This document shows, in pieces, positions 1 through 63,670 of a stretch of DNA of 64,000 nucleotides. The DNA is taken from positions 28,086,001-28,150,000 of the forward strand of contig OZ360243.1 of the NCBI GenBank assembly GCA_977017645.1. Reading direction: 5' to 3'. Both the position numbers and the translations under genes were made by a program. Origin of the DNA: Torpedo marmorata. Lineage: Eukaryota. Below the pieces are notes generated by a model. That model was not told where the DNA came from, searched no databases, and saw nothing but the letters and a program-made list of their open reading frames with translations. Position 1 is the first letter of the stretch. The number at the start of each line of letters is the position of its first letter.

Positions 1-479
1 TATTGCTGTTTGGTACAGGCAAAATTATTGAACATAGAAAGGTCCGAGAAGTATACTAATTGGGAAAGGTTTGATTAAATGAAATCTCTGGTGTTTCAAC
101 TGCTGCACCTCAATATGTCAACCCCAGTCAGGGCAGCAGTCTGTAAGATTAATCCTCTTCTCTATCTATTCAATTTCGCACTTCCATATGTCAAAAAATT
201 ATCACAGCGTATTTGGACAAAAAAATTTACTGAAAAGTTGAATAATCTCATGCATAATATGCTTTGACAACAGTATGCAGGTGATCAAAAAGTCAGTGTT
301 TCAGTTGAAGCAGCAATCCTGCAAATTCCAAACATGCTCTGGTTTTGCATGATGTTCGAAGATTTGAAACATTTGCACAGGTCTCCTTAAAATTATTGAC
401 TTGTACCAAATTAGATCACCAAGTCATGCTATTCAAGTTGCATTTTTCCACTATTAATGCATTTGCGCTCTCTCTCCAG

Positions 480-530
480 GAACAGAAACAACATCGTTGA
501 CAACTCCCTCAACAATAAGTTCCACAACAG
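480..530 (+). CDS. Exon type A, first copy (51 nt): (G)TETTSLTTPSTISSTT
   Basis: Polypyrimidine tract ctctctctccag ends at 479; donor CAG|GTGAGT at 531; phase-1 reading is Thr/Ser-rich and stop-free. Confidence 0.85.
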
Positions 531-3500
531 GTGAGTACATATACTTTTAATATGTTGACACAAATGATCCTTTACTACAAAAACACATGACATGCACAGC
601 TCATTCTTTTATTTGTTCAACAACATGCTCCTTTCCTGTGGCCAGGCAACAGCAAACAAATTCACATTTGAAAAACAGCCCAATATATATGCTAGACAAA
701 TACCGGTATATATTCCCTGAGCCCAATCTATATGCGAGACAAATAAATGTCTGAATAGCAGCATGATCACATGTTCAAGACAAGGAAATAACATGGGGAA
801 CTGGATTAAATCATTCTCTCAGCACACAGGATTCACAAATGTCCAGGAAGAGAGTCAAAATTGATATGATACAAGGACATGGCATCTTTCGGCTGTTCAA
901 TAAGAGGTTGCAAGAATGAGAGCATACCAGTCTGTTTCCGTCCTTCCACAAATATTTCCAAAAATACACAATTCTCCACATGCATTCATTTCCACAAATA
1001 TAGGTGAATTTCAATGTTAAATTGTACAAAAACATTCTGACATTTTGCACATGAGATGCTCATGATTTCCAAATAACATGGAGAAGATGAGGAGATGACA
1101 GTGTTACAAACATAGGATACAACTTCTGATATTTCCAACTATAACCAGATTCTGGATGCCAAATATTTTTAATTAGCATGGTTTAAACTATAATTTTGCA
1201 TTTATCGTTATTTTGGTCCCATTTTCATTGGCTCCACATTTAATCGCATTGAAATGAGCATGGAGCGGTTGTTAACACTTTACTTCTCTTTCATAAGAAA
1301 CAACTGGAAGGAGCACAACTGGCACCACACAGACGACAGCCAGTTCCACAACAGGTGGGTGATCATGTCTTTCAATGGCCTTTGTTGAGATTCTCAACAA
1401 CGTGTCTCCTTCAATTTAACGTCCATTACATCTTGGCGACCCTCTGTCTGCCTTACAATAGACAAAAATTAAAGAATTTCATGTATGTTACATTTTAAAT
1501 GTAGTATTACGTGACAATAATAGAACCTTTACCCCGTAAACAGGGTTGCTTTAATTTCAACCTGTAACAAGTGCAAATGCAATTCCTCCTTGTTAAATTC
1601 AAAAGAAGTCGCTGATGACCTTCAGCAGGGGCGGCATGGTTAGCGTAGCAGTTAGCGCAACGCATCTTACAGCGCCAGCAACCCGTGTTCCAATACGGCA
1701 CTCTCCGTAAGGAGTTTGTACGATCTCCCCCTGTCTGCGTGTGCTTCATCTGGGTGTTCCGTTTCCTTCTAACGCTTCAAATCGTTCCGGGGTTCTAGTT
1801 CAATTGGGTGTAATTCGGCTCCACGGATTCGTGGGCCGAATTGTCCTGTAACCATGCTGTATGTCTAAATTTAAATTTGTAAGTTTAAAAATTATGCGAA
1901 CTGAGAAGTCGTCTTCTGATCTTCATTGTTCTCCTTACTTTCATGAGGAGTAACCACCTCAGCAAAGAGCATTGCTAAATCTCACAAATAATCGTGTTGG
2001 ACGATTTTAATCCTGGAATCAAAAATAAATTTAGGAGTCAGATTTTTTGCAAAGGGAAGACCCATTCTTTTATTTCTCCAGCTCCTGTGACTGATAATTT
2101 TTCAACAGATGTACAATTGCTTCCCTCTTCAGGTACATTTGTTGATAGTTTAGCTCCAAAAATTTACATCACACTGAGGGAAATGAGGACAGTTTCTGAA
2201 CATAGGAGAGGCCTTTTGGATCCAATTGCGCTGACTTTTATCATAACCAGGATGAGGCTTGTCACCTTTCAGTTGACATGGATTTGAATGCATTGAACCA
2301 GTGCTTTTATAGGAAAACTCACAAAATTTTATCGTCTGAACACTTCAACCAACTCTATTGCTGTTTGGTAAAGGCAAGATTATTGAACATAGAAAGGTCC
2401 GAGAAGTATACTAATTGGGAAAGGATTGATTAAATTAAATCTTTGGTGTTTCAACTGCTGCACCTCAATATGTCAAACTCAGTCACGGCAGCAGTCTGTA
2501 AGATTAATCCTCTTCTCCATCTATTCACTTTCGCACTTCCACCTGTCAAAAAATTATCACAGCAGATTTGGACAAAAACATTAAGCGAAAAGTTGAATAA
2601 TCTCATGCATCATATGCTTTGCCAACAGTATGTAGGTGATCAAAATGTCAGTGTTTGAGTTGAAGCAAAAATCCAGCAAATTCCAAATATGCTCTGGTTT
2701 TGCATGATGTTTGAAGATTTGAAACATTTGCAAAGGTCTCCTTAAAATTATTGACTCGTACCAATTAGATCACCAAGTCATGCTATTCAAGTTGCATTTT
2801 GCCACTATTAATGCATTTGCTCTCTCTCTCCAGGAACAGAAACAACATCGTTGACAACTCCCACAGCAATAAGTTCCACAACAGGTGAGTACATGTGCTT
2901 TTAATATGTTGACACAAATGTCCCTTTACTGCAAAAACACATGAAATGCACAGATGAATCTTTTGTTTTTCCAACAACCTGCTACTTTGATGTGGCCAGG
3001 CAACAGCAAACAAGATAAATCTTCCATCAGCACAAAATATATGCGAGACAAATTAAGGCTGTGAATAATAGCGTGATAACATGTTCAAGACAAGGAAATA
3101 TCATGGGGAACTGGATTAAATCATTCTCTCAGCACACAGCAGACACACACATGTCCAAGAAGAGAGTCAAAATTGATTTGATGCAGGAAAATGGCATTTT
3201 TCGGATATTCAATAAGAGGTTGCAAAAATGGGAACACACCCGTCTGTTTTCGTCTGTCCACATGTAATTCCAAAAATTCCGAATTCTCAACATGCATTCA
3301 TTTCCACACATATAGGTGAATTTCAATGTCGAATTGTACAAAAACATTCTGACATTTTTCACTTTTGAAGCTCATGATTTCCAAATAACATGGACAAGAA
3401 TGGGATAAGACAGTGTTACAGGCACAAGATACAACTTCTGATATTTTCAACCATAACCAGATTCGGGAGGCCAAATATTTTTAATTAGCATGGTTTAAAC

Positions 3501-6500
3501 TATATTTTTGCATCTATCATCATTTCTGTCCCAGTTACATTGGCTCCACGTTTAATCGCATTGAAAGGTGCATGGAGCGGTTGTTAACACTCTCTTTCTC
3601 TTTCACAAGAAACAACTGGAACGAGCACAACTGGCACCACACAGACGACAGCCAGTTCCACAACAGGTGAGTGATCATGTCTTTTAATGGCTTTTGTCGA
3701 GATTCTCAACACAACACGTCTCCTTCAGTTTCGCATCCAGTACATCCCCGTCAACAGGGTTGCTTTAATTTCAACCTGTAAAAAGTGCAAGTGATATTCC
3801 TCCTTGTTAAATTCAAAAGAAGTCGCTGATGAACTTCAGCAAGAGCGGCATGATTAGCGTAGCAGCGCAACGCTGTTACAGTGCCAGCGACCCGTGTTCG
3901 AATAGGGCACTCTCTGCAAGGAGTTTGTACTATCTCCCCGTGTATTTTGTCACTATTCATGCATTTGTTCTCTCTCTCCAGGAACAGAAACAACATCCTT
4001 GACAACTCCCTCAACCATAAGTTCCACATCAGGTGAGTACATATCCTTTCACTAAGTTGACACAAATGTTCCTTTAATGCAAATACACATGACATGCACA
4101 GCTCATTCTTTTGTTTGTCCAACAACATGGTCCTTTCCTGTGGCAAGGCAACAGCAAACAAATTCACATTTGAAAACCAGTTAAATCTTCCCTCAGCCCA
4201 ATATTTATGCAAGACAAATAAATGTCTGTGAATAACAGCCTGATAACATGTTCAAGACAAGGAAATAACATGGGGAACTGGATTAAATCATTCTCTCAGC
4301 ACACAGCAGACACACACATGTCCAAGAAGATAGTCAAAATTGATTTGATGCAGGAAAATGGCATTTTTCGGATATTCAATAAGAGGTTGCAAAAATGGGA
4401 ACACACCCGTCTGTTTTCGTTTGTCCACATGTAATTCCAAAAATTCCGAATTCTCAACATGCATTCATTTCCACACATATAGCTGAATTTCAATGTCGAA
4501 TTGTTCAAAAAAGTTCTGACATTTTGCACTTTTGAAGCTCATGATTTCCAAATAACATGGAGAAGATGAGGAATGACAGTGTTACAGACACAGGATACAA
4601 CTTCTGATATTTTCAACTACAACCAGATTCGGGAGGCCAAATATTTTTAATTAGCATGGTTTAAACTATATTTTTGCATCTATTATCATTTCTGTCCCAG
4701 TTTCATTGGCTCCACGTTTAATCGCATTGAAAGGAGCTTGGTGTGGTTGTTAACACTCTCCTTCTCTTTCAAAAGAAACAACTGGAACGAGCACAACTGG
4801 CACCACACAGAAGACAGCCAGTTCCACAACAGGTGGGTGATCATGTCTTTCAATGGCTTTTGTCGAGATTCTGATCAACACGTCTCCTTCAGTTTCACAT
4901 CCATTACATCCCCGTAAACAGGGTTGCTTTAATTTCAACCTGTAACAAGTGCAAATGCAATTCCTCCTTGTTAAATTCAAAAGAAGTCGCTGATGACCTT
5001 CAGCAGAGGCGGCATGATTAGCGTAACAGTTAGCGCAACGCTCTTACAGCGCCATCGAACCGTGTTCCAATACGGCACTCTCTGCAAGGAGTTTGTACGA
5101 TCTCCCCGTGTATTTTGTCACTATTCATGCATTTGTTCTCTCTCTCCAGGAACAGAAACAACATCCTTGACAACTCCCTCAACCATAAGTTCCACAACAG
5201 GTGAGTACATATCCTTTCACTAAGTTGACACAAATGTTCCTTTACTGCAAATACACATGACATGCACAGCTCATTCTTTTGTTTGTCCAACAACATGTTC
5301 CTTTCCTGTGGCCAGGCAACAGCAAACAAATTCACATTTGAAAACCAGTTAAATCTTCCCTCAGCCCAATATTTATGCAAGACAAATAAATGTCTGTGAA
5401 TAACAGCCTGATAACATGTTCAAGACAAGGAAATAACATGGGGATCTGGATTAAATCATTCTCTCAGCACACTGGATTCACACATGTCCAGGAAGAGAGA
5501 CAAAATTGATTTGAGACAAGGAGATGGCATCTTTGGGCTGTTTAATAAGAGGTTGAAAGAATGGAGCACACCAGCCTATTTTCGTCTGTCCACATGTCAT
5601 TCCAAAAATTCAGAATTCTCCACATGCATTCATTACCACACATGCAGGTGAATTTCAATGTTGAATTGTACCAAAACATTCTGACATTTTGCACATAAGA
5701 AGCTCATGATTTCCAAATAACATGGAGAAGATGGGGAATGACAGTGTTACAGCGCAGGATTCAACTTCTGATATTTCCAACTACAACCAGATTCGGGATG
5801 TCAAATATTTTAATTAGCATGGTTTAAACTATATTTTTGCATCTATCATCATTTCTGTCCCAGTTTCATTGGCTCCACATTTAATCGCATTGAAAGGAGC
5901 ATGGTGTGGTTGTTAACACTCTCCTTCTCTTTCAAAAGAAACAACTGGAACGAGCACAACTGGCACCACACAGACGACAGCCAGTTCGACAACAGGTGAG
6001 TGATCATGTCTTTCAATGGCTTTTGTCGAGATTCTCAACACAACTCGTCTCCTTCAGTTTCGCATCCAGTACATCCCCGTAAACAGGTTTGCTTTAATTT
6101 CAACCTGTAACAAGTGCAAGTGCAATTCCTCCTTGTTAAATTCAAAAGAAGTCGCTGATGACCTTCAGCAGGGGCGGCATGGTTAGCGTAACAGTTAGCG
6201 CAACGCTCTTACAGCGCCATCGAACCGTGTTCCAATACGGCACTCTCTGCAAGGAGTTTGTACGATCTCCCCGTGTATTTTGTCAATATTCATGCATTTG
6301 TTTTCTCTCTCCAGGAACAGAAACAACATCCTTGACAACTCCCTCAACCATAAGTTCCACAACAGGTGAGTACATATCCTTTCACTAAGTTGACACAAAT
6401 GTTCCTTTACTGCAAATACACATGACATGCACAGCTCATTCTTTTGTTTGTCCAACAACATGCTCCTTTCCTGTGGCCAGGCAACAGCAAACAAATTCAC

Positions 6501-9500
6501 ATTTGAAAACCAGTTAAATCTGCCCTCAGCCCAATATTTATGCAAGACAAATAAATGTCTGTGAATAACAGCCTGATAACATGTTCAAGAGAAGGAAATA
6601 ACATGGCGAACTGGATTAAATCATTCTGCCTTCACACATGTCCAGGAAGAGAGTCAAAATTGATTAGAGACAAGGAGATGGCATCTTTCGGCTGTTTAAT
6701 AAGAGGTTGAAAGAATGGAGAACACCAGCCTATTTTCGTCTGTCCACATGATATTCCAACAATTCCAAATTCTCAACATGCTTTAATTTCCACACAAAGA
6801 AGTGAATTTCAAAGTCGAATTGTACAAAAACATTCTGACATTTTGCACTTTTGAAGCTCATGATTTCCAAATAACATGGACAAGAATGGGATAAGACAGT
6901 GTTACAGGCACAAGATACAACTTCTGATATTTTCAACCATAACCAGATTCGGGAGGCCAAATATTTTTAATTAGCATGGTTTAAACTATATTTTTGCATC
7001 TATCATCATTTCTGTCCCAGTTACATTGTCTCCACGTTTAATCGCATTGAAAGGTGCATGGAGCGGTCGTTAACACTCTCTTTCTCTTTCACAAGAAACA
7101 ACTGGAACGAGCACAACTGGCACCACACAGACGACAGCCAGTTCCACAACAGGTGAGTGATCATGTCTTTTAATGGCTTTTGTCGAGATTCTACACACTA
7201 CACGTCTCCTTCAGTTTCGCATCCATTACATCCCCGTCAACAGGGTTGCTTTAATTTCAACCTGTAACAAGTGCAAGTGATATTCCTCCTTGTTAAATTC
7301 AAAAGAAGTCGCTGATGAACTTCAGCAAGAGCGGCATGATTAGCGTAGCAGCGCAACGCTGTTACAGTGCCAGCGACCCGTGTTCGAATAGGGCACTCTC
7401 TGCAAGGAGTTTGTACTATCTCCCCGTGTATTTTGTCACTATTCATGCATTTGTTCTCTCTCTCCAGGAACAGAAACAACATCCTTGACAACTCCCTCAA
7501 CCATAAGTTCCACATCAGGTGAGTACATATCCTTTCACTAAGTTGACACAAATGTTCCTTTAATGCAAATACACATGACATGCACAGCTCATTCTTTTGT
7601 TTGTCCAACAACATGGTCCTTTCCTGTGGCAAGGCAACAGCAAACAAATTCACATTTGAAAACCAGTTAAATCTTCCCTCAGCCCAATATTTATGCAAGA
7701 CAAATAAATGTCTGTGAATAACAGCCTGATAACATGTTCAAGACAAGGAAATAACATGGGGAACTGGATTAAATCATTCTCTCAGCACACAGCAGACACA
7801 CACATGTCCAAGAAGATAGTCAAAATTGATTTGATGCAGGAAAATGGCATTTTTCGGATATTCAATAAGAGGTTGCAAAAATGGGAACACACCCGTCTGT
7901 TTTCGTTTGTCCACATGTAATTCCAAAAATTCCGAATTCTCAACATGCATTCATTTCCACACATATAGCTGAATTTCAATGTCGAATTGTTCAAAAAAGT
8001 TCTGACATTTTGCACTTTTGAAGCTCATGATTTCCAAATAACATGGAGAAGATGAGGAATGACAGTGTTACAGGCACAGGATACAACTTCTGATATTTTC
8101 AACTACAACCAGATTCGGGAGGCCAAATATTTTTAATTAGCATGGTTTAAACTATATTTTTGCATCTATTATCATTTCTGTCCCAGTTTCATTGGCTCCA
8201 CGTTTAATCGCATTGAAAGGAGCTTGGTGCGGTTGTTAACACTCTCCTTCTCTTTCAAAAGAAACAACTGGAACGAGCACAACTGGCACCACACAGACGA
8301 CAGCCAGTTCCACAACAGGTGGGTGATCATGTCTTTCAATGGCTTTTGTCGAGATTCTGATCAACACGTCTCCTTCAGTTTCACATCCATTACATCCCCG
8401 TAAACAGGGTTGCTTTAATTTCAACCTGTAACAAGTGCAAATGCAATTCCTCCTTGTTAAATTCAAAAGAAGTCGCTGATGACCTTCAGCAGAGGCGGCA
8501 TGATTAGCGTAACAGTTAGCGCAACGCTCTTACAGCGCCATCGAACCGTGTTCCAATACGGCACTCTCTGCAAGGAGTTTGTACGATCTCCCCGTGTATT
8601 TTGTCACTATTCATGCATTTGTTCTCTCTCTCCAGGAACAGAAACAACATCCTTGACAACTCCCTCAACCATAAGTTCCACAACAGGTGAGTACATATCC
8701 TTTCAATAAGTTGACACAAATGTTCCTTTACTGCAAATACACATGACATGCACAGCTCATTCTTTTGTTTGTCCAACAACATGTTCCTTTCCTGTGGCCA
8801 GGCAACAGCAAACAAATTCACATTTGAAAACCAGTTAAATCTTCCCTCAGCCCAATATTTATGCAAGACAAATAAATGTCTGTGAATAACAGCCTGATAA
8901 CATGTTCAAGACAAGGAAATAACATGGGGATCTGGATTAAATCATTCTCTCAGCACACAGGATTCACACATGTCCAGGAAGAGAGTCCAAATTGATTTGA
9001 GACAAGGAGATGGCATCTTTCGGCTGTTTAATAAGAGGTTGAAAGAATGGGAGCACACCAGCCAATTTTCGTCTGTCCACATGTCATTCCAAAAATTCCG
9101 AATTCTCAACATGCATACATTTCCACACATGCAGGTGAATTTCAATGTTGTATTGTACAAAAACATTCTGAAATTTTGCACATAAGAAGCTCATGATTTC
9201 CAAATAACATGGAGAAGATGGGGAATGACAGTGTTACAGCACAGGATTCAACTTCTGATATTTCAGAATCAGAATCAGAATCAGAATCAGAATTTATTGT
9301 CATGAACAAGTCATGAAATTCGGTGCTTTGCGGCAGCATCATAGTGCAATTAACATTCATATTAACCATTCTAACGACATTACTATATAAAAATTATAAA
9401 CAATAGTGCACTAGTGTCTTTGGTTCATTGATTGTTCAGGAATCTGATGGCAGCGGGGAAGAAGTTGACCTTGTGCCGTTGAGTGCTCGTCTTTAGGCTC

Positions 9501-26961: not shown

Positions 26962-26995
<34 letters not shown>

Positions 26996-53900: not shown

Positions 53901-56900
53901 TTAATAAGAGCTTGAAAGAATGGGAGCACACCAGCCTATTTTCGTCTGTCCACATGTCATTCCAAAAACTCTGAATTTCCACATGCATTCATTTCCACAC
54001 ATGCAGGTGAATTTCAATGTTGAATTGAACCAAAACATTCTGAGATTTTGCACATAAGAAGCACATGATTTCCAAATAACATGGGGAAGATGGGGAATGA
54101 CAGTGTTACAGCACAGGATTCAACTTCTGATATTTCCAACTACAACCAGATTCGGGAGGCCAAATATTTTTAATTAGCATGGTTTAAATTATAATTTTGC
54201 ATCAGTCATCATTTCTGTCCCAGTTTCATTGGCTCCACGTTTAATCGCATTGAAAGGAGCTTGGTGTGTTTGTTAACACTCTCCTTCTCTTTCACAAGAA
54301 ACAACTGGAACGAGCACAACTGGCACCACACAGACGACAGCCAGTTCCACAACAGGTGGGTGATCATGTCTTTCAATGGCTTTTGTCGAGATTCTGATCA
54401 ACACGTCTCCTTCAGTTTCACATCCATTACATCCCCGTAAACAGGGTTGCTTTAATTTCAACCTGTAACAAGTGCAAGTGCAATTCCTCCTTGTTAAATT
54501 CAAAAGAAGTCGCTGATGACCTTCAGCAGGGGCGGCATGGTTAGCGTAGCAGTTAGCGCAACGCTCTTACAGCGCCAGCGTCCCGTGTTCCAATACGGCA
54601 CTCTCTGCAGGGAGTTTGTACGATCTCCCCGTGTATTTTGTCACTATTCATGCATTTGTTCTCTCTCTCCAGGAACAGAAACAACATCGTTGACAACTCC
54701 CTCAACCATAAGTTCCACAACAGGTGAGTACATATCCTTTCAATAAGTTTACACAAATCTTCCTTTACTGCAAATACACATGACATGCACAGGTCATTCT
54801 TTTGTTTGTCCAACAACATGCTCCTTTCCTGTGGCCAGGCAACAGCAAACAAATTCACATTTGAAAACCAGTTAAATCTTCCCTCAGCCCAATATTTATG
54901 CAAGACAAATAAATGTCTGTGAATAACAACCTGATAACATGTTCAATGCAAGGAAATAACATGGGGAGCTGGATTAAATTATTCTCTCAGCACACAGGAT
55001 TCACACATGTCCAGGAAGAGAGTCAAAATTGACTTGATACAAGAAAATGACATCTTTCGGCTGTTTAAGAGGTGCAAAAATGGGAACACATCCGCCTGTT
55101 TTTGTCTGTCCACATGTAATTCCAAAAATTCAGAATTCTCAACATGCATTCATTTCCACACATGCAGGTGAATTTCAATGTCGAATTGTACAAAAACATT
55201 CTGAAATTTTGCACGTAAGCAGCTCATGATTTCCAAATAACATGGAGAAGATGGGGAATGACAGTGTTACAGCACAGAATTCAACTTCTGATATTTCCAA
55301 CTACAACCAGATTCGGGAGGCCAAATATTTTCAATTAGCATGGTTTAAACTATAATTTTGCATCAATCATCATTTCTGTCCCAGTTTCATTAGCTCCACG
55401 TTAAATCGCATTGAAAGGAGCATGGTGTGGTTGTTAACACTCTCCTTCTCTTTCACAAGAAACAACTGGAACGAGCACAACTGGCACCACACAGACGACA
55501 GTCAGTTCCACAACAGGTGAGTGATCATGTCTTTCAATGGCTTTTGTCGAGATTCTCAACACAACACGTCTCCTTCAGTTTCGCATCCAGTACATCCCCG
55601 TCAACAGGGTTGCTTTAATTTTCACCTGCAACAAGTGCAAATTCAATTGCTCCTTGTTAAATTCAAAAGAAGTCGCTGATGAACTTCAGCAAGAGCGGCA
55701 TGATTAGCGTAGCAGCGCAACGCTGTTACAGCGCCAGTGACCTGTGTTCCAATAGGGCACTCTCTGCAAGGAGTTTGTACGATCTCCTCGTGTATTTTGT
55801 CACTATTCATGCATTTGTTCTCTCTCTCCAGGAACAGAAACAACATCCTTGACAACTCCCTCAACCATAAGTTCCACATCAGGTGAGTACATATCCTTTC
55901 AATAAGTTGACACAAATGTTCCTTTACTGCAAATACACATGACATGCACAGCTCATTCTTTTGTTTGTCCAACAACATGCTCCTTTCCTGTGACAAGGCA
56001 ACAGCAAACAAATTCACATTTGAAAACCAGTTAAATCTGCCCTCAGCCCAATATTTATGCAAGACAAATAAATGTCTGTGAATAACAGCCTGATAACATG
56101 TTCAAGACAAGGAAATAACATGGGGAACTGGATTAAATCATTCTCTCAGCACACAGGATTCACACATGTCCAGGAAGAGAGTCAAAATTGATTTGAGACA
56201 AGGAGATGGCATCTTTCGGCTGTTTAATAAGAGCTTGAAAGAATGGGAGCACACCAGCCTATTTTCGTCTGTCCACATGTCATTCCAAAAACTCTGAATT
56301 TCCACATGCATTCATTTCCACACATGCAGGTGAATTTCAATGTTGAATTGAACTAAAACATTCTGAAATTTTGCACATAAGAACCACATGATTTCCAAAT
56401 AACATGGGGAAGATGGGGAATGACAGTGTTGCAGCACAGGATTCAACTTCTGATATTTCCAACTACAACCAGATTCGGGAGGCCAAATATTTTTAATTAG
56501 CATGGTTTAAATTATAATTTTGCATCAATCATCATTTCTGTCCCAGTTTCATTGGCTCCACGTTTAATCGCATTGAAAGTAGCTTGGTGTGGTTGTTAAC
56601 ACTCTCCTTCTCTTTCACAAGAAACAACTGGAACGAGCACAACTGGCACCACACAGACGACAGCCAGTTCCACAACAGGTGGGTGATCATGTCTTTCAAT
56701 GGCTTTTGTCGAGATTCTGATCAACACGTCTCCTTCAGTTTCACATCCATTACATCCCCGTAAACAGGGTTGCTTTAATTTCAACCTGTAACAAGTGCAA
56801 GTGCAATTCCTCCTTGTAACATTCAAAAGAAGTCGCTGATGAACTTCAGCAAGAGCAGCATGATTAGCGTAGCAGCGCAACGCTGTTACAGCGCCAGCGT

Positions 56901-59900
56901 CCCGTGTTCGAATAGGGCACTTTCTGCAAGGAGTTTGTACGATCTCCCCGTGTATTTTGTCACGATTCATGCATTTGTTCTCTCTCTCCAGGAACAGAAA
57001 CAACATCCTTGACAACTCCCTCAACCATAAGTTCCACATCAGGTGAGTACATATCCTTTCAATAAGTTGACACAAATGTTCCTTTACTGCAAATACACAT
57101 GACATGCACAGCTCATTCTTTTGTTTGTCCAACAACATGATCCTTTCCTGTGGCCAGGCAACAGCAAACAAATTCACATTTGAAAACCAGTTATTTTAAT
57201 TGGGGGGGGATTTTAATTGTTGTCTGGATTCAATAATGGATAGGACTTCTAGATCGTTAGTTAGGCCTAAAATAGTTAAAAGAATTATAAATTTGATGAA
57301 AGATTTGAATTTAATAGATATTTGGAGGAAATTGAATCCTCGAGAGAAAGATTATTCCTTTTATTCTTTTAGACATGATTCATACTCTAGGATAGATTTG
57401 TTTTTAATATCTTCACAAATTCAAGATAGAATATCACAGGTATCATATAAAGCGAGAATAATTTCAGATCATTCACCTTTGTTAATGACATGTATTATTC
57501 CAGAAAAGGAGAAAACTATATTTAATTGGAGATTTGATTCTTCTTTATTGAAAAGGACAGATTTTTGTGAATATATGAGAAGGGAAATTCAAGAATTTTT
57601 GAGGATAAATGATCAATCAATTAATGATAAATTTATAATTTGGGAAACTTTAAAGGCTTATCTTAGAGGTTTGATAATATGTTATTCGGCAAAAATTAAA
57701 AAAGATTATTTGAAAGAAGCAGAAAAATTAGAGAAAGAGATTGAGATTATGGAAAAAGATTTACAGAGAAATAAATCAATTCGTAAGAGAAATTGTTTAA
57801 TGAGGAAAAAGTTACATTATAATTTATTACAAACGTATAAAACGGAAAAATTAATAGAAAGAATGAAACAAAGATATTATGAATTAGGAGAAAAGGCTCA
57901 TAAAGTTTTAGCATGGCAATTGAAAAAGGAACAAGTTTCTAAAACTATAAATGCTATAAAGAAAAAAAATACTGGTGAAATAACTTATAAACCCCAAGAA
58001 ATAAATGAATCTTTTAAAGATTATTATCAGAATTCATATAGATCTCAAGTTGTTCAGGATGATTTGAAAATTAATAGATTCTTATCTAGAATTATTTTAC
58101 CTAAATTAAATACTCAGAATAAAAATTTTTTAGATTTACCTTTTATGATGAGAGAAGTTAATGAAGTATTATCGACGTTAAAAAGTGGTAAATCCCCTGG
58201 TGATGATGGATTTCCAGTAGAATTTTATAAAGAATTTAAAGATTTATTGATACCTCTATATATGGAAGTATTAAATCAGATTACGGAAACTCATTTATTA
58301 CCAAAAACTTTTTTGAATGCTATTATTACAGTTATACCAAAGAAAGATAGAGATGTATTAAAAACGGAGTCATATAGACCTATTTCTTTATTAAATGTAG
58401 ATTATAAGATTATGGCAAAAATTTTGGCTAATAGAATAGCTAAATATTTACCAAATTTGATACATCCAGATCAAGCTGGTTTTATTAAAAATAGATATTC
58501 TAAAGATAATATAGCTAGATTATTAAGTTTAATTAATTTTCATAAAAAGAAACAAGATTTACCATTGGTGGTAACGTTGGATGCAGAAAAGGCTTTTGAT
58601 AGATTAGAATGGAATTTTTTATTTAAGGTGTTAGAGAAATTTGGTTTTGGGAATACTTTTATAAATTGGATTAAAACTATATATAAGGAACCTTCAGCTA
58701 AAGTAATTACAAATGGACAAATATCGTCAAAATTTTCTTTAACGCGTTCTACAAGACAGGGTTGTCCTTTATCACCAGCTTTATTTGTTTTGGCAATAGA
58801 ACCTTTAGCTGAATTGATTAGGACAGATCCTAATATAGTAGGGATTAAAGTCGGTATGGAAGAGCATAAGATTAGTTTGTTTGCAAATGATGTACTAATA
58901 TATATGACAAAATCAGTTTTATCACTTCAACATTTAGCTATTATATTAACAGAATATGGTGAAATATCTGGATATAAAATTAATGCGGATAAAAGTGAAA
59001 TAATGGCTTTATCTCAAGGTGATTATACTAGATGTAAAGAAGTTACGGAATTTAAGTGGGCAAAAGAAGGAATTAAATATTTGGGAGTAAAAGTGGATAC
59101 AAAATTAGAAAATTTATATAAATTAAATTATATACCCTTATTTACGAAAATAAAGAAAGATTTGGAAAATTGGAAAGATTTACCTATAACTTTAATGGGG
59201 AGAGTAAATTGTATTAAGATGAATATTTTTCCAAGAATTCAATATCTTTTTCAATCAATTCCTTTTGGAATTCCAAAAAATTTTTTTAAAGATTTAAAAT
59301 TTATAGTTAGGAAATTTTTATGGAAAGAGAAGTTAGCAAGAGTGAGTATGGAGAAGTTAACATGGAATTATGAGATGGGAGGAATGCAACTCCCTAATTT
59401 TCAATATTATTATAAAGCAGCTCAATTAAAATTTGTTAATGAATTTTTTGATTTAGCTAAAACTTCTGCTTGGATTAATATAGAATTAAATAATATAGGA
59501 GAAAATTATAAAGAGGATATTATTTATAAGTGGAACTCTAAATTATTATCAGTAAAAAAGAAAAATTCACCGATTATTAAACATTTATTGGAAGTATGGA
59601 CACAGGTAGATAAAGAAATAGGTGGGAAAGGAATAATTTCTTTAAATATGCCATTATATCAAAATCCACTTTTATTATTTACTATGAATAATCAGTTATT
59701 GAAAACATGGTTTCAAAAAGGTATTAAAAATTTTAAAGATTGTTTTGAAGCTGGAAGATTTGTTACGTTTCAAAGATTGAAAGAAAAATTTGATATATTA
59801 GATAATACATGGTTAGCTTATTATCAGGTTAAAGCTTTTTTGGTTGAGGAATTAGGAGAAAATTTGATTGCTCCAAGGTATAATGAGTTAGAATTACTAA

Positions 59901-62900
59901 TTACTAAAGCAAATGTTAATAAGTTTATTTCTCAAATGTATAAATTATTTCAGAGAAAAATACCTAAAGTAGGATTACATAAATCAAGATTAAAATGGGA
60001 ATTAGATTTAAATATTAATATAGCTCAAAAACATTGGGAAGATTTATGTAAATTATGTATGACTAAAGTTATTAATGTTAGATATAGATTAGTACAATAT
60101 AATTTTTTCCATCAATTATATTTAACACCAAAAAATTAAAGAAATTTAATCCGACATTATCAGATTTGTGTTTTAGATGTAAGAATGAAGTAGGTTCATT
60201 TGTTCATTCTACATGGTTATGTCCAAAGATTCAATATTTTTGGCTTAAAGTTAAGAATTTTTTAGAGAGAGTTTTTAATGTTAGGTTTCCAATGGATCCT
60301 ATGTTATTTCTATTGGAGATATTAGAAAATTTAGTATTAGGAATAGATTGAATATGTATCAGGTAGAATTTTTGCGTATTGCTTTAGCTGTTTCAAAAAA
60401 ATGTATTGCTATTACTTGGAAATCAGATTTAGATTTGAATTTAGATAGAAGGCATGCAGAACTTCGTTCGTGTATTCCTTTGGAAAAAATTACTTATAAT
60501 TTACGTAATAAATATCATTCATTTTTTTAAATTTGGAGCCCATATATGAGTTATGGGTTTGAGGATTTGAAATTTTTTGAAATCAGATCTATTGGCGAGT
60601 TTAACCTCCAGATTAAAATTGGTTTTCAGATGGTTCTCTCCTCACTATTAATCTCTTTTTCTTTTCCTTTTTTCTTTTTCTATTTTTAGAATAGTGGGGT
60701 TGGGGGGGTTGGGGAGGGGTGGGAGGGTGCGGGGGGAGGAAATTTATATCACTGTATTTTGGAAACTATATACCGTATAAGTCGACCGGCAGATAAGTCG
60801 ACCCCCCTTTTTCAGCCTCATTTTAATGGTTTTATGGTATATCTGGCGTATAAGTCGACCCCCAAAAATCGCGATGCCTGAGATGTTGCGCATTGACCGG
60901 CGTATAAGTCGACCCCCAATTTTCAGGCTGTCTGGGCCTCCCAGCAACAACCCAAAATTTGTTACAACATTCCAATCGCCAAGTAACAAAGCTGTAAATT
61001 AAGCAAGTACCGGTAAGTAAAAAAAAAACAGTAAAAAAAAACCTTTGCTTCTGGCCGGGAAGATGCAGGTGCGGCGACGTCTTTCTCCTGAGCAGTAGCG
61101 GGGAGCTCGTTCTCCCGAGCAGTAGCGGGGACTCATTCTCCCGAGCAGGAGCGGGGGCGTCTTTCTCCCGAGCAGGAGCGGGGAGCTCGTTCTCCCGGGC
61201 AGGTGCGGGGACTCGTTCTCCCGGGCAGGAGCGGGGACTCGTTCTCCCGGGCAGGAGCGGGGAGCTCGTTCTCCCGAGCAGGAGCGGGGAGCTCGTTCTC
61301 CCGAGCAGGAGCGGGGAGCTCGTTCTCCCGAGCAGGAGTGGGGAGCTCGTTCTCCCGAGCAGGAGCGGGGACGTCGTTTTCCCAGGTAGGAGTGGGGAGC
61401 TCGTTCTCACGAGCAGGAGCGGGGACGTCTTTCTTCCGAGCAGGAGCGAGGAGCTCATTCTCCCGGGTAGGAGCGGGGACCTCGGGCTCTACAATTGTAG
61501 AATGTCTGGGAGGTTTATGGCGGCGCCCGGCGGTGGGGAAGTGTCGGGGAGCGGCGGCGCCGGCAGTGGGGAGGCGCTTCCAGGGTCGACCTATACGCCG
61601 AATCGTGTTTTCAGGGGTCGACTTATACGCCGAATCGTGTTTTCAGGGGTCGACTTATACGCCGAATCGGCGTGAACTCGATTTTGAGCTGATTTTAAGG
61701 TCTCAAAAGTATATCTGGCGTATAAGTCGACCCCCGTTTTTTGAGACATTTTTGAGGGTTTCAAGGGTCGACTTATACGCCGAAATATACGGTATTTTAA
61801 ATTATGTATTATGTGATTTAAAAAATTTAAATAAAATAATTAAAAAAAAGAAAACCAGTTAAATCTTCCCTCAGCCCAATATTTATGCGAGACAAATAAA
61901 GGCTGTGAATAATAGTGCAATGACATGTTCAAGACAAGGAAATAACATGGGGAACTGGATTAAATCATTCTCTCAGCACACAGCAGGCACACACATGTCC
62001 AAGAAGATAGTCAAAATTGATTTGATGCAAGAAAATGGCATTTTTCGGATATTCAATAAGAGATTGCAAAAATGGGAACACACCCGTCTGTTTTCGTTTG
62101 TCCACATGTAATTCCAAAAATTCCGAATTCTCAACATGCATTAATTTCCACACATATAGGTGAATTTCAATGTCGAATTGTACAAAAACAATCTGAAATT
62201 TTGCACATAAGAAGCTCATGATTTCCAAATAACATGGAGAAGATGGGGAATGACAGTGTTACAGACACAGGATACAACTTCTGATATTTTCAACCATAAC
62301 CAGATTCGGGAGGCCAAATATTTTAATTAGCATGGTTTAAACTATATTTTTGCATCTATCATCATTTCTGTCCCAGTTTCATTGGCTCCACATTTAATCG
62401 CATTGAAAGGAGCATGGTGTGTTTGTTAACACTCTCCTTCTCTTTCACAAGAAACAACTGGAACGAGCACAACTGGCACCACACAGACAACAGTCAGTTC
62501 CACAACAGGTGAGTGATCATGTCTTTCAATGGCTTTTGTCGAGATTCTCAACACAACACGTCTCCTTCAGTTTCGCATCCAGTACATCCCTGTCAACAGG
62601 GTTGCTTTAATTTTCACCTGAAACAAGTGCAAATTCAATTGCTCCTTGTTAAATTCAAAAGAAGTCGCTGATGAACTTCAGCAAGAGCGGCATGATTAGC
62701 GTAGCAGCGCAACGCTGTTCCAGCGACAGTGACCTGTGTTCCAATAGGGCACTCTCTGCAAGGAGTTTGTACGATCTTCCCGTGTATTTTGTCACTATTC
62801 ATGCATTTGTTCTCTCTCTCCAGGAACAGAAACAACATCGTTGACAACTCCCTCAACCATAAGTTCCACAACAGGTGAGTACATATCCTTTCAATAAGTT

Positions 62901-63670
62901 GACACAAATGTTCCTTCACTGCAAATACACATGACATGCACAACTCATTCTTTTGTTTGTCCAAAACATGCTCCTTTCCTGTGGCCAGGCAACAGCAAAC
63001 AAATTCACATTTGAAAACCAGTTAAATCTTCCCTCAGCCCAATATTTATGCAAGACAAATAAATGTCTGTGAATAACAGGCTGATAACATGTTCAAGGCA
63101 AGGAAATAACATGGTGAGCTGGAATAAATCATTCTCTCAGCACACAGGATTCACACATGTCCAGGAAGAGAGTCAAAATTGACTTGATACAAGAAAATGG
63201 CATCTTTCAGCTGTTTAATAAGAGGTTGCAAAAATGGGAACACACCCGTCTGTTTTCTTTTGTCCACATGTAATTCCAAAAATTTTTAATTCTCAACATG
63301 CATTCATTTCCACACATGCAGGTGAATTTCAATGTCGAATTGTACAAAAACATTCTGAAATTTTGCACATAAGAAGCTCATGATTTCCAAATAACCTGGA
63401 GAAGATGGGGAATGACAGTGTTACAGCACAGGATTCAACTTCTGATATTTCCAACTACAACCAGTTTCGGGAGGCCAAATATTTTTAATTAGCATGGTTT
63501 AAACTATAATTTTGCATCAATCATCATTTCTGTCCCAGTTTCATTGGCTCCACGTTTAATCGCATTGAAAGGAGCATGGTGTGGTTGTTAACACTCTCCT
63601 TCTCTTTCACAAGAAACAACTGGAACGAGCACAACTGGCACCACACAGACGACAGCCAGTTCCACAACAG
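480..63670 (+). CDS. Internal part of a multi-exon mucin-like (Thr/Ser-rich) gene: 91 short phase-1 exons encoding a 36-aa tandem repeat; N- and C-termini outside the window
   Basis: Manual reading. Exon A (51 nt, ctctctccag|GAACAG...CCACA(A/T)CAG|gtgagt) starts at 480, 2834, 3982, 5150, 6315, 7468, 8636, 10516, 11678, 12843, 14008, 15161, 16324, 17488, 18650, 19815, 20980, 22133, 23297, 28022, 29187, 30352, 31505, 32669, 33833, 36112, 38387, 39549, 40715, 41878, 43042, 44203, 45369, 46532, 47696, 48857, 50024, 51181, 52345, 53509, 54673, 55832, 56992, 62824. Exon B (57 nt, ttctctttca(c/a)aag|AAACAAC...CAACAG|gtg(a/g)gt) starts at 1298, 3610, 4776, 5939, 7096, 8262, 10146, 11306, 12471, 13632, 14789, 15950, 17116, 18278, 19443, 20604, 21761, 22923, 27650, 28815, 29976, 31133, 32295, 33461, 34625, 35736, 36900, 38011, 39175, 40341, 41504, 42670, 43829, 44995, 46158, 47324, 48483, 49653, 50810, 51972, 53138, 54299, 55460, 56622, 62452, 63614. 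Exon C is at 2082. All lengths are multiples of 3 and phase 1-1; I saw no stops or indels in these exons, while the introns have many indels. No transcript evidence is available here. Confidence 0.85.
1298..1354 (+). CDS. Exon type B, first copy (57 nt): (E)TTGRSTTGTTQTTASSTT
   Basis: Acceptor ttacttctctttcataag ends at 1297; donor CAG|GTGGGT at 1355; phase 1-1. Confidence 0.8.
1433..1531 (+). mobile_element. ~100-bp insertion, probably the extreme 3' end of a 5'-truncated LINE
   Basis: Other units read cattacatc-cccgtaaacaggg contiguously; here ~99 bp intervene, ending gtgacaataatagaaccttta(cc), which resembles a LINE 3' tail. Family not determinable. Confidence 0.5.
1628..1893 (+). mobile_element. 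Full-length tRNA-derived SINE of the V-SINE/HE1 type
   Basis: tRNA-like head ggcggcatggttagcgtagcagttagcgcaacg with a degenerate B-box (gttccaatac); V-domain-like core ggagtttgtacgatctccccctgtctgcgtgtgcttcatctgggtgttccgtttcc; CR1/HER1-like tail gggccgaattgtcctgtaaccatgctgtatgtctaaat followed by AT-rich short repeats. Family recognised from memory, not by database search. Confidence 0.8.
2082..2132 (+). CDS. Exon type C (51 nt, single copy in window): (A)PVTDNFSTDVQLLPSS, with an N-F-S sequon
   Basis: Strong acceptor cattcttttatttctccag ends at 2081; donor CAG|GTACAT at 2133; same phase as A and B and same length as A. Confidence 0.65.
3843..3943 (+). mobile_element. 5' half of the same SINE, present once in each short unit (representative copy)
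   Basis: gagcggcatgattagcgtagcagcgcaacg...ggagtttgtactatctccccgtgt, then an abrupt switch to the pre-exon-A intron sequence attttgtcactattcatgcattt. Confidence 0.8.
9263..9985 (-). mobile_element. 5'-truncated Rex1/Babar-type (CR1 group) non-LTR retrotransposon fragment
   Basis: Minus-strand ORF with KTKEMIVDFRR, FLGVNISEDLSW, QRLYFVRRLRRF, LLPSGKRYRS and FFPAAIRFLN, the post-RT C-terminal region typical of Rex1-like LINEs. Stop at 9425, then 3' UTR, AATAAA (9293-9298, minus strand) and a (TTCTGA)5 tail at 9263-9292. The flanks rejoin as ...ctgatatttc|aactacaacc; no clear TSD. Confidence 0.85.
23449..26999 (+). mobile_element. 5'-truncated L1-clade LINE with poly(A) tail and 12-bp TSD (AACATGCTCCTT at 23437-23448 and 27000-27011)
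   Basis: AT-rich ORF2, G-rich 3' UTR tract (26849-26886), AATAAA at 26955, ~30-nt poly(A) tail and TSD; the empty site is visible in paralogous units near 16465 and 32810. Confidence 0.95.
23451..26672 (+). CDS. L1 ORF2 (C-terminal end of APE endonuclease, reverse transcriptase, Cys-rich knuckle); uninterrupted but 5'-truncated
   Basis: The frame is open upstream of the annotated Met (KDYSFYSFRHNSFSRIDLF...IISDHSPLL). Motifs include KSPGDDG, YRPISLLNVDYK, LDAEKAFD, RQGCPLSP, FADD (24981-24992) and CFRC-x8-HCTWSC. Confidence 0.9.
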   Translation, partial: KDYSFYSFRHNSFSRIDLFLLSSQIQDRITQISYKARIISDHSPLLMTCIIPEKEKTVYNWRLDSSLLNRKDFCDYMRKEIQEFLRINNNSVDDKFIIWESLKAYLRGLIISFSAKIRKDYLKEEEKLEGEIEVMEKNFQRNKTILKRQRLMGKKLHYNILQTRKIEKLIGRTKQRYYELGERAHKVLAWQLKKEQVSKTINAIKKSNGDITYKPQEINNSFKEYYQNLYTSQMSQDVVKIDDFLSKIMLPKLNSSNRDLLDLPITMREVGEALSSLNSGKSPGDDGFPVEFYKKFKDLLIPIYMEVLTQIKETQLLPKTFLNAVITVIPKKDRDVLKTESYRPISLLNVDYKLMAKILTNRLAKFLPFLIHSDQAGFIKNRYSKDNIARLISLINLQKKKQDLPLVIALDAEKAFDRLEWKFLFKVLEKYGFGNTFINWIKTIYKEPTAKVITNGQISSKFSLTRSTRQGCPLSPALFVLAIEPLAEMIRKDMTIKGIKVGTEEHKISLFADDVLIYMTKSIESLQQLDKILRDYGEISGYKINSDKSEIMALSQGDYTKCKEVTKFKWAKEAIKYLGVKVDTKLENLYKLNYIPLFQKIKKDLDNWKDLPITLIGRVNCIKMNIFPRVQYLFQSIPFSIPQKFFKDLKSIIRKFLWKGKLARVSMDKLTWEYEMGGLQLPNFQYYYKAAQLKFINELFDLTKNTAWINIELNNIGERNKEDIIYKWNSKLLLIKKKKSPIIRHLLEIWNQLDNEIGRKGSISLNMPLYQNLLLPFSMDNQFLKVWHQKGIKKIKDCFEAGRFVTFSRLKEKFGIMDNTILAYYQVKGFLVEKLGNQLISPRQDGLELLITNGNVNKFISQMYKLFQKKIPKVGLHKSRLNWESDLNTNIDEQHWKELCKLSMTKIINVRYRLVQYNFFHQLYITPKRLKKFNPALSDMCFRCKDKIGSFVHCTWSCLKIKNFWSKVKDFLDRIFNIMIPLDPMIFLFGDIKRISIRNRLNMYQIEFLRIVLAISKKCIAITWKSDLDLNLDRLHAELRSCIPLEKITYNLRDKYHFFLKIWSPYMRIMGMN
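34981..34999 (+). pseudogene. Deleted exon A remnant (~54-bp deletion), copy 1
   Basis: Reads tgttct-acaacag-gtgagt; the acceptor and the first ~44 nt of exon A are missing. Confidence 0.85.
37256..37274 (+). pseudogene. Deleted exon A remnant, copy 2 (duplicated at 2,275-bp offset)
   Basis: Identical junction tgttctacaacaggtgagt. Confidence 0.85.
57200..60530 (+). pseudogene. Disrupted L1 ORF2
   Basis: The RT catalytic motif reads FAND (58880-58891) instead of FADD. Frameshifts near 60135 and 60310 split the C-terminus into ORFs 57200..60139, 60166..60351 and 60348..60530, with an early stop at 60530. Confidence 0.88.
60773..61792. mobile_element. Non-autonomous Tc1/mariner-superfamily (Tc2/pogo-like) MITE with TA target duplication, nested in the L1 3' UTR
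   Basis: TA|CCGTAT...ATACGG|TA termini; repeated subterminal motif GGCGTATAAGTCGACC (forward at ~60774, 60792, 60846, 60899, 61717; reverse at ~61584, 61616, 61648, 61766); no transposase. Removing it restores collinearity with the 3' UTR of the first L1. Confidence 0.85.
61080..61481. repeat. GC-rich ~27-bp minisatellite (gagcaggagcggggagctcgttctccc), about 15 copies, inside the MITE
   Basis: Read directly; it produces the repetitive ORFs 60832..61458(-) and 61203..61862(+). Confidence 0.9.
63614..63670 (+). CDS. Exon type B, last copy in the window: (E)TTGTSTTGTTQTTASSTT
   Basis: Acceptor tctctttcacaag ends at 63613; donor CAG|GTGGGT at 63671. Confidence 0.8.

What the first reader, a model, noticed from the sequence alone, without database searches (positions are those of the whole stretch)
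480..63670. A 60-kb apparent satellite is a hidden mucin-like gene built from about 90 tandem mini-exons
Seen: each ~1.16-kb unit holds two short segments bounded by polypyrimidine-AG and CAG|GTG(A/G)GT, 51 and 57 nt long, both phase 1-1. Spliced, they read (GTETTSLTTPSTISSTT-ETTGTSTTGTTQTTASSTT)n, 26 of 36 residues Thr/Ser; 44 A + 46 B + 1 C exons give 4,917 nt (1,639 codons) without a stop. Known: Thr/Ser-rich tandem repeats are O-glycosylated mucin domains; MUC2/MUC5-type genes keep them mostly in one giant exon, while exon-per-repeat organisation is reported for a few mucins (e.g. MUC19, chicken Muc13). Inference: this is a large secreted or membrane mucin whose glycodomain grows by duplicating whole exon-intron cassettes, and repeat-masking pipelines would likely miss it.
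Basis: partly seen in the sequence, partly recalled or inferred. Interest (0 to 1): 0.92.

Follow-up and report, generated by a model that had tools for sequence, protein, structure and literature searches.

The report
Mucin-like gene built from ninety mini-exons
What looks like a 60-kb satellite is most likely the sugar-carrying middle of a large mucin-like gene, built from about ninety tiny, well-kept exons that alternate between two types, a layout already known on a smaller scale from a few other mucins.

Summary
The + strand carries 44 copies of a 51-nt segment (A) and 46 copies of a 57-nt segment (B). All 90 are full length, without indels, and flanked by AG and GT. In the 1,163-nt consensus unit, the only two GTRRGT donor-like sites and the two best polypyrimidine-AG sites bound exactly these segments. 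The segments vary about three times less than the introns (π 0.022 vs 0.064). They show no splice-site change or indel, where intron rates predict about 15 and 17.

In phase 1 each A+B pair encodes 26 Thr/Ser in 36 residues. The best reading is a multi-exon mucin-type domain that grew by unequal crossing-over of exon-intron cassettes.

Points not settled:
- Phase 2 is also open and would give an Asn/His-rich repeat.
- The synonymous/non-synonymous ratio looks neutral.
- No RNA run was listed, so splicing is unproven.
- The array runs off both window ends, so no signal peptide or anchoring domain could be examined.

Precedents exist: chicken Muc13, Xenopus Otogl and schistosome SmPoMuc. This is therefore a new, much larger member of a known kind.

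The parts
1..64000 (+). Tandem array of exon-intron cassettes. It fills the whole window and continues past both ends.
   Evidence: Positions 1-479 align to 2355-2833 at 93% identity. 63,614-63,951 aligns to the consensus unit, after which the sequence continues as the ancestral long intron.
480..62874 (+). 44 type-A mini-exons, 51 nt each, phase 1-1. Starts: 480, 2834, 3982, 5150, 6315, 7468, 8636, 10516, 11678, 12843, 14008, 15161, 16324, 17488, 18650, 19815, 20980, 22133, 23297, 28022, 29187, 30352, 31505, 32669, 33833, 36112, 38387, 39549, 40715, 41878, 43042, 44203, 45369, 46532, 47696, 48857, 50024, 51181, 52345, 53509, 54673, 55832, 56992, 62824.
   Evidence: 44 of 44 are flanked by a polypyrimidine tract plus CAG upstream and GTGAGT downstream, and none has an indel.
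1298..63670 (+). 46 type-B mini-exons, 57 nt each, phase 1-1. Starts: 1298, 3610, 4776, 5939, 7096, 8262, 10146, 11306, 12471, 13632, 14789, 15950, 17116, 18278, 19443, 20604, 21761, 22923, 27650, 28815, 29976, 31133, 32295, 33461, 34625, 35736, 36900, 38011, 39175, 40341, 41504, 42670, 43829, 44995, 46158, 47324, 48483, 49653, 50810, 51972, 53138, 54299, 55460, 56622, 62452, 63614.
   Evidence: 46 of 46 are flanked by a polypyrimidine tract plus AAG upstream and GTGAGT or GTGGGT downstream, and none has an indel.
5150..6314 (+). One representative derived cassette pair: exon A 5150-5200, intron of 738 nt, exon B 5939-5995, intron of 319 nt.
   Evidence: The consensus unit is 1,163 nt.
1..3666 (+). 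Ancestral-type units of about 2.35 kb, with a 1,479-nt B-to-A intron that carries a complete SINE-like element.
   Evidence: Segment 1735-2792 is absent from the derived units. The breakpoint lies inside the SINE-like element.
63614..64000 (+). Last cassette in the window, again with the ancestral long type of B-to-A intron.
   Evidence: Homology to the derived consensus stops at 63,951, and the SINE-like sequence continues as in unit 1.
34682..35735 (+). Cassette whose A exon is destroyed by a 49-nt deletion (acceptor plus first 39 nt). The donor remnant is at 34,994. Two B exons are therefore neighbours here.
36957..38010 (+). Second copy of the same A-deleted cassette, part of a 2,275-nt duplicated block.
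23449..26995 (+). 5'-truncated non-LTR retrotransposon in an A-to-B intron, same orientation as the exons. It has a 1,027-aa open frame with a reverse transcriptase domain, an A-rich tail, and a 16-nt duplication of the target.
   Evidence: (RVT_1, E 8.7e-42).
57194..61849 (+). Second retrotransposon of the same family in an A-to-B intron, same orientation. It has a 979-aa frame, a 12-nt target duplication, and a further GC-richer element with 27-nt and 32-nt tandem repeats nested in its 3' part.
   Evidence: (RVT_1, E 7.8e-41).
9265..9985 (-). 721-nt fragment of another mobile element inside an A-to-B intron, next to a (TCAGAA)5 run.
   Evidence: (PF09004, E 9.8e-14).

Best explanation
The window is the repetitive middle of a protein-coding gene of a vertebrate.

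Two kinds of mini-exon, 51 and 57 nt, alternate. Each lies between a strong acceptor and a consensus donor, and all are in the same symmetric phase. Spliced together in phase 1, they would give a Thr/Ser-rich, low-complexity polypeptide of at least 1,622 residues. That is the kind of sequence that is densely O-glycosylated in mucins (inferred from composition).

The domain lengthened by unequal crossing-over between cassettes. First an A and a B cassette arose from one ancestral cassette. Then a 2.35-kb A+B unit formed. Then a 1,058-nt deletion in one intron gave a 1.16-kb unit, which was amplified singly and in blocks of 2, 4 and 6 units.

Every exon is a multiple of 3 and phase 1-1. Gain, loss or skipping of any cassette therefore keeps the frame. 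This lets the array vary in length and tolerates the two cassettes that lost exon A.

Shown here: the exon anatomy, the constraint, and the duplication history. Inferred: splicing, the choice of frame, glycosylation, and secretion.
For: Anatomy:
- 90 of 90 segments are intact, with AG and GT flanks.
- In the 1,163-nt consensus unit the + strand has exactly two GTRRGT sites, both preceded by CAG and both at segment ends. The two best pyrimidine-tract AG sites (13 of 14 pyrimidines) lie exactly 51 and 57 nt upstream of them. The - strand has no such donor.

Constraint:
- In 37 aligned units, π is 0.022 over 108 exon columns against 0.064 over 1,055 intron columns. Variable columns are 15 of 108 against 302 of 1,055 (Fisher p = 0.0009).
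- The result is the same without CpG sites, 0.022 vs 0.062. About 0.4% of random window pairs are as uniform.
- All 24 distinct gap runs lie in introns.
- Non-consensus cells are 57 of 3,996 in exons against 1,645 of 38,739 in introns. Splice dinucleotides deviate in 0 of 296 cells, where 12.6 are expected. About 17 indel runs are expected in the 90 exons at intron rates and none is seen.
- Between the two old units, the exons differ at 3 of 108 sites and the intron at 96 of 722 (Fisher p = 0.0007).

Frame:
- In phase 1, only 4 of 18 variant types remove a Ser/Thr, against 45% expected (p = 0.04).
- The variants carried by many copies are synonymous or conservative in phase 1, but are Asn>Ile, His>Asp and Phe>Cys in phase 2.

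History:
- Blocks at lags 2,275, 4,654, 6,972 and 9,372 are more than 97% identical.
- The deletion breakpoint lies inside the SINE-like element.
- The A and B cassettes share a 36-nt alignment across the donor, score 46 against a shuffle maximum of 28.

Precedent: PTS repeats with one exon per repeat are documented in chicken Muc13 (PMC1552070, section 8 read in full).
Against: - No RNA evidence: no run was listed, so no read could be laid and no splice junction was seen.
- Two of the three frames are open, and the frame depends on exons outside the window.
- In phase 1 the variant types are 6 synonymous and 12 non-synonymous, against 31% synonymous expected. There is no classical dN/dS signal.
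- Proline is scarce (1 in 36) for a textbook PTS domain.
- The copies share ancestry, so the column and cell statistics overstate independence. The absence of indels alone has a chance of about 0.1 (my estimate from 24 runs and a 9% exon share).
- Two young retrotransposons of 3.5 and 4.7 kb lie in introns in the sense orientation. Such insertions can impair transcription through a gene.
- No signal peptide, SEA, EGF, VWD, cystine-knot or transmembrane exon could be looked for.
- Copy numbers in assembled tandem arrays can be wrong.
Confidence: 0.68

Rival explanations
1. The cassettes are real exons by origin, but the amplified array is now a dead or never-expressed by-product. On this view a piece of a gene turned into a satellite, and its uniformity comes from recent amplification and homogenisation, not from selection.
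For: - Blocks more than 97% identical show very recent duplication.
- The synonymous/non-synonymous ratio is neutral.
- There are two sense-oriented retrotransposon insertions and two cassettes with a destroyed A exon.
- There is no expression evidence.
Against: - Homogenisation acts on whole units. It does not explain why exon columns are about three times less variable than intron columns within the same units.
- It does not explain why the old, 13%-diverged units keep the exons at 3 of 108 differences.
- It does not explain why 0 of 360 splice-dinucleotide positions and 0 of 90 exons carry a lesion.
Confidence: 0.15
2. The exons are real and spliced but read in phase 2. That gives an Asn/His-rich repeat with Trp, Asp and Phe, not a mucin.
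For: Phase 2 is open in both exon types in all copies. Nothing in the window fixes the frame.
Against: - In phase 2 only 1 of 18 variant types is synonymous, against 19% expected.
- The variants spread over many copies are radical in phase 2: Asn>Ile in 17 copies, His>Asp in 5, Phe>Cys in 3.
- The least variable codon position would be the third, the reverse of the usual pattern (counted by me: 7, 7 and 4 variants).
- Openness of a frame is weak evidence here, because the exons hold only 12 T in 108 nt.
- From general knowledge, not tested here: duplicated extracellular modules are typically phase 1-1.
Confidence: 0.09
3. It is an ordinary non-coding satellite whose unit happens to contain splice-like motifs and A/C-rich stretches.
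For: - The arrangement is head-to-tail tandem with higher-order blocks.
- Low T content makes open frames likely by chance.
Against: - The only two consensus donors and the two best acceptors of the unit pair up at 51 and 57 nt. Both lengths are multiples of 3 and both are on one strand.
- These stretches are the least variable part of the unit. The window of lowest π covers the B acceptor and the start of exon B.
- There are no lesions in 90 copies.
Confidence: 0.03

Closest known systems
Chicken Muc13 (transmembrane mucin), and a zebrafish Muc13 homologue (Lang, Hansson and Samuelsson 2006, PMC1552070)
   Same: The PTS domain is split into many short, nearly identical exons, one repeat unit per exon. 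Chicken has 20 residues per exon and at least 12 repeats, close to the 17 and 19 residues here. The authors also propose that length could be tuned by splicing, and that this may be an ancestral vertebrate design (section 8 read).
   Different: - This array has at least 90 exons of two alternating types, arranged in higher-order blocks over more than 60 kb.
- Orthology to Muc13 is untested, because SEA, EGF and transmembrane exons and the HEG neighbour lie outside the window.
- Chicken Muc13 has EST support; this locus has no transcript evidence.
Xenopus tropicalis skin mucin Otogl / MucXS (Dubaissi et al. 2018, PMC5789918)
   Same: It is a gel-forming mucin whose central mucin domain is stated to be multi-exonic instead of one large exon (passage read).
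   Different: Only that statement was seen. Exon number, size and phase were not seen, and supplements are closed. Its mucin domain is interspersed with Cys-rich domains, whereas nothing but A and B exons occurs in this window.
Schistosoma mansoni polymorphic mucins (SmPoMuc)
   Same: These genes carry 0 to 20 tandem repeats of a 27-bp exon, and variation is produced by recombination and alternative splicing (passage in the review PMC4015677).
   Different: It is an invertebrate parasite family with shorter exons and far fewer copies. There is no reason to assume common descent; the similarity is one of design only.
Classical vertebrate mucins (MUC1, MUC2, MUC5AC/B, MUC6, MUC7)
   Same: They have a Thr/Ser-rich tandem-repeat domain whose copy number changes by unequal recombination.
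   Different: Their repeats lie within one large exon. This is stated in PMC1552070 section 8 and in the abstract start of PMC13345508 seen in a listing. Here every repeat is its own exon, and 92% of the array is intron.

Membership tests
Mucin-domain (PTS) glycoprotein | A long domain dominated by Thr/Ser (and usually Pro), commonly built from tandem repeats | tested here: met
   In phase 1, 26 of 36 residues per A+B pair are Thr/Ser, over 90 exons and 1,622 codons. Caveats: Pro is only 1 in 36, and the frame is chosen, not proven.
Mucin-domain (PTS) glycoprotein | Dense O-glycosylation of the domain | not testable with these tools
   Needs biochemistry or glycoproteomics.
Mucin-domain (PTS) glycoprotein | Entry into the secretory pathway (signal peptide), and expression as a spliced mRNA | tested here: inconclusive
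   The array runs off both window ends. No sequencing run was listed, so no reads could be laid.
Exon-per-repeat mucin design (chicken Muc13 type) | Each repeat unit is encoded by its own short exon with functional splice sites, and all exons share one phase | tested here: met
   90 of 90 segments have AG/GT flanks. Lengths of 51 and 57 nt are both multiples of 3. The donors and acceptors are the best in the unit.
Muc13 orthologue | SEA, EGF and transmembrane domains after the PTS domain; the HEG gene as neighbour | not testable with these tools
   No non-repetitive exon of the gene lies in the window, and no genome of this organism is searchable with the tools.
Gel-forming mucin (MUC2/5/6/19 type) | N-terminal VWD-C8-TIL units and a C-terminal cystine knot | not testable with these tools
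   These would lie outside the window. Inside it, only A and B exons and mobile elements were found.
Non-coding satellite DNA | A tandem unit with no sub-region under coding or splicing constraint | tested here: not met
   Exon columns are about three times less variable than intron columns and carry no indel or splice-site change.

The most novel reading that the evidence does not exclude
The gene is a cartilaginous-fish counterpart of the exon-per-repeat mucins. Its 90+ symmetric mini-exons would act as a bank of cassette exons: one locus makes mucins of many lengths by alternative splicing within an individual, and unequal crossing-over changes the length between individuals. It would be by far the largest exon-per-repeat mucin domain among the cases I read. 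It would also be direct support for the proposal of Lang et al. (2006) that this was the ancestral vertebrate way of building mucin domains, later replaced by single giant exons.
Probability: 0.2. Interest if true: 0.72.

Novelty: new member of a known kind. Interest (0 to 1): 0.5.

Why it matters
Mucin domains are usually described as one giant repetitive exon. The few exceptions read here (chicken Muc13, Xenopus Otogl, schistosome SmPoMuc) have up to about 20 repeat exons where a number was given.

If this locus is expressed, it shows that a mucin-sized domain of more than 1,600 residues can be built entirely from 51/57-nt exons, with over 90% of the locus being intron. That would give a natural system for three questions:
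- how repeat length is set by splicing as against recombination;
- how so many near-identical splice sites are used in order;
- whether exon-per-repeat is the ancestral design.

There is also a practical point. Loci like this look like satellites and may be masked before gene prediction, so mucin inventories of such genomes could be incomplete. That point is plausible but was not tested here.

Tried and rejected
- **Tandem Repeats Finder.** It did not report the 1.16-kb period because its longest period is 500. This says nothing against the array.
- **The look-up of sequencing runs.** It listed no run for one cassette pair. Read laying needs run ids, so it was not called, and splicing stayed unchecked.
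- **Metagenome scans.** Exact scans for exon B and exon A found 0 matches, which is expected for a vertebrate gene.
- **Protein-level searches.** None could be made. A single exon has 16 or 18 whole codons, below every protein tool's minimum length.
- **The search of earlier findings.** It was closed. One search failed for a missing field. No earlier finding was seen.
- **Failed or flawed scripts.** One search aligned overlapping pieces of the same intron and is void; one search replaces it.
- **Minus-strand ORFs of 123-153 aa.** They recur only because the unit recurs. They start at TTG, are broken in many units, hit no family above threshold, and have no donor-like site on that strand. Rejected.
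Every GTRRGT site outside the A and B exons was inspected and none bounds a 51-nt in-phase segment.
- **The MUC19 statement.** Not verified; one search gave only a listing.
- **Elasmobranch mucins in print.** Searches with shark or elasmobranch terms returned no paper on such a gene. Of the listed papers, only PMC4948705 was opened, for its passages. PMC9417175 and PMC13345508 were seen as listing and abstract start only.
- **Supplements.** They were not asked for. Exon tables for Xenopus Otogl or chicken Muc13 may exist there and could change the size comparison.
- **Host taxon.** Not determined. I chose not to spend a large protein search on the retrotransposon for that purpose.
Full report
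**What is in the sequence**

The window is filled by a head-to-tail array on the + strand. A scan that needed only similarity to the segment bodies, not splice sites, found 44 copies of a 51-nt segment (A) and 46 copies of a 57-nt segment (B). There were none on the - strand. Every copy is full length, and every copy is preceded by AG and followed by GT (coordinates, flanks and per-exon translations).

A is preceded by a long pyrimidine tract ending in CAG and followed by GTGAGT. B is preceded by a pyrimidine tract ending in AAG and followed by GTGAGT or GTGGGT. In 37 regular A-B-A units the period is 1,148-1,168 nt, with introns of about 740 and 315 nt.

In the 1,163-nt consensus unit, the + strand holds exactly two GTRRGT hexamers. 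Both follow CAG and both lie at the segment ends. The two strongest pyrimidine-tract AG sites (13 of 14 pyrimidines) lie exactly 51 and 57 nt upstream of them. The - strand has no such donor. Over the whole window the + strand has 101 GTRRGT sites: 90 are at the segment ends, 2 at remnants of deleted A exons, and 9 in mobile elements or the old long intron.

I found no third ('C') exon, so the coding total is 44 x 51 + 46 x 57 = 4,866 nt, or 1,622 codons.

**Reading frames**

Both lengths are multiples of three, so whatever frame enters the array is kept throughout.

- **Phase 1.** The last G of each exon joins the first two bases of the next. The split codons are GGA before A and GAA before B. 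The whole codons of A read TETTSLTTPSTISSTT and those of B read TTGTSTTGTTQTTASSTT in the consensus. That is 26 Thr/Ser in 36 residues per pair, with no stop in any of the 90 exons.
- **Phase 2.**
- **Third frame.** It has stops in A.

The exons hold only 12 T in 108 nt, so open frames are cheap here and are not evidence in themselves. I checked openness exon by exon and did not build or search the joined model.

**Are the segments constrained?**

- In the alignment of 37 regular units, mean pairwise diversity is 0.022 over the 108 exon columns and 0.064 over 1,055 intron columns. Variable columns are 15 of 108 against 302 of 1,055 (Fisher p = 0.0009).
- Leaving out CpG columns changes nothing (0.022 vs 0.062). 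Only about 0.4% of random pairs of 51- and 57-nt windows are as uniform. The least variable stretch of the whole unit covers the B acceptor and the start of exon B.
- All 24 distinct gap runs lie in introns. Taken alone, that has a chance of roughly 0.1 (my estimate).
- Counted per copy, 1.43% of exon cells (57 of 3,996) and 4.25% of intron cells (1,645 of 38,739) differ from the consensus. None of 296 splice-dinucleotide cells differs, where 12.6 are expected. At intron rates the 90 exons should carry about 17 indel runs and about 15 splice-dinucleotide changes, and they carry none.
- The two oldest units in the window differ at 96 of 722 aligned intron sites (13.3%, plus 48 gap positions) but at only 3 of 108 exon sites (Fisher p = 0.0007).

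The copies are related by descent, so these p-values overstate independence. The direction is nevertheless the same in every comparison.

**Which frame, and is it protein-level selection?**

Eighteen variant types occur among the 90 exons.

- In phase 1, 6 are synonymous and 12 are not, against 31% synonymous expected. There is no classical dN/dS signal.
- Of the 12 non-synonymous types, 6 exchange Thr and Ser. Only 4 of all 18 types remove a hydroxy-amino acid, against 45% expected (p = 0.04).
- The variants that have spread to many copies are silent or mild in phase 1: a silent Ser change in 17 copies, Thr>Ser in 17, Ala>Val in 11, a silent Ser change in 5.
- In phase 2 only 1 of the 18 types is synonymous, and the widespread variants are Leu>Val, Asn>Ile, His>Asp and Phe>Cys.

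This favours the Thr/Ser frame and selection on composition more than on exact sequence, as expected for a mucin domain. It is suggestive, not decisive.

**History of the array**

The first two units (1-3,666) and the last one (from 63,614) have a 1,479-nt B-to-A intron that contains a complete SINE-like element. In all units between them, 1,058 nt are missing. The breakpoint lies inside that element, about 35 nt upstream of the A acceptor tract. The 1.16-kb unit is therefore a deletion derivative of a 2.35-kb unit and was amplified afterwards.

Blocks of 2, 4 and 6 units recur at lags of 2,275, 4,654, 6,972 and 9,372 nt with more than 97% identity. This is the signature of unequal crossing-over. 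The A and B cassettes share a 36-nt alignment that runs from the exon end across the donor into the intron (score 46; shuffles reach at most 28). The two exon types are therefore probably old duplicates of one cassette.

Two neighbouring cassettes, in a duplicated 2,275-nt block, lost the A acceptor and the first 39 nt of the exon. Because all exons are symmetric, B-to-B splicing would keep the frame.

Three mobile-element insertions lie in A-to-B introns:
- two retrotransposons of 3.5 and 4.7 kb, with reverse-transcriptase frames of 1,027 and 979 aa, target-site duplications of 16 and 12 nt, and the same orientation as the exons;
- one 721-nt fragment.

**What could not be tested**

- No public run was listed for a cassette pair, so no reads could be laid and splicing is unproven.
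- The array leaves the window on both sides, so the exons that would define the protein (signal peptide, SEA/EGF/transmembrane, or VWD/cystine knot) are out of reach.
- Single exons are too short for every protein search tool, and the joined model was not to be searched.
- Two exact scans of metagenome contigs with exon B and exon A found nothing.
- The host taxon was not determined.

**Comparison with what is known**

Lang et al. (2006; PMC1552070; passages, section 8 in full) reported that the chicken Muc13 PTS domain has at least 12 repeats of 20 residues, each in its own exon. They had EST support and found a zebrafish homologue organised likewise. They proposed that this may be an ancestral design and that splicing could regulate mucin length.

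Dubaissi et al. (2018; PMC5789918; passage) state that the mucin domain of the Xenopus skin mucin Otogl is multi-exonic. The schistosome SmPoMuc genes carry 0-20 tandem copies of a 27-bp exon (review PMC4015677; passage). Classical mucins keep the repeats in one large exon (PMC1552070 section 8; abstract start of PMC13345508 in the listing).

Searches combining mucin with shark or elasmobranch terms and with 'repeated exons' returned no description of a locus like this one. That is a statement about those searches only.

**Verdict**

The most likely explanation (about 0.68) is a multi-exon, Thr/Ser-rich mucin-type domain that is expanding by cassette duplication.

Main rivals:
- an unexpressed amplified gene fragment (0.15);
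- the same exons read in phase 2 (0.09);
- a plain satellite (0.03).

The design has precedents, so I class it as a new member of a known kind. It is notable for its scale (at least 90 exons, array incomplete), for its two alternating exon types, and for the clear record of how it grew. Interest is 0.5. It would rise if transcripts show ordered or regulated use of the exons.

Noticed in passing
window 23449-26995 and 57194-61849: Two copies of one AT-rich non-LTR retrotransposon family (GC about 0.26) with long open reverse-transcriptase frames of 1,027 and 979 aa. Both have target-site duplications of 16 and 12 nt, so the insertions are young. Both are in the sense orientation inside introns of the array.
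   Followed up: partly
window 60700-61840: A GC-richer element is nested in the 3' part of the second retrotransposon. It has 15.7 copies of a 27-nt tandem repeat (61065-61484), 2.7 copies of a 32-nt repeat (61583-61669), and a short motif that recurs in both orientations around them. Long ORFs on both strands here are repeat-driven and hit no Pfam family.
   Followed up: no
window 1620-1870, and the matching part of every B-to-A intron (e.g. 6165-6275): A SINE-like element predates the amplification. It is complete in the ancestral units and cut by the 1,058-nt deletion in all derived units. Rfam and ARAGORN do not recognise it.
   Followed up: partly
window 9258-9985: A (TCAGAA)5 microsatellite is followed by a 721-nt mobile-element fragment. 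Its minus-strand 200-aa frame matches Pfam PF09004 (E 9.8e-14).
   Followed up: partly
window 34425-39302: A 2,275-nt block is duplicated at more than 97% identity. The block carries the cassette with the 49-nt deletion of exon A, so the lesion was copied and not purged.
   Followed up: partly
window 3751-4212 and 12 further places, minus strand: A recurrent 139-153-aa minus-strand ORF starting at TTG runs antisense through exon A and the SINE-like piece. It is present only in some units. It has no family match and no splice-like signals on that strand, and is judged incidental.
   Followed up: yes
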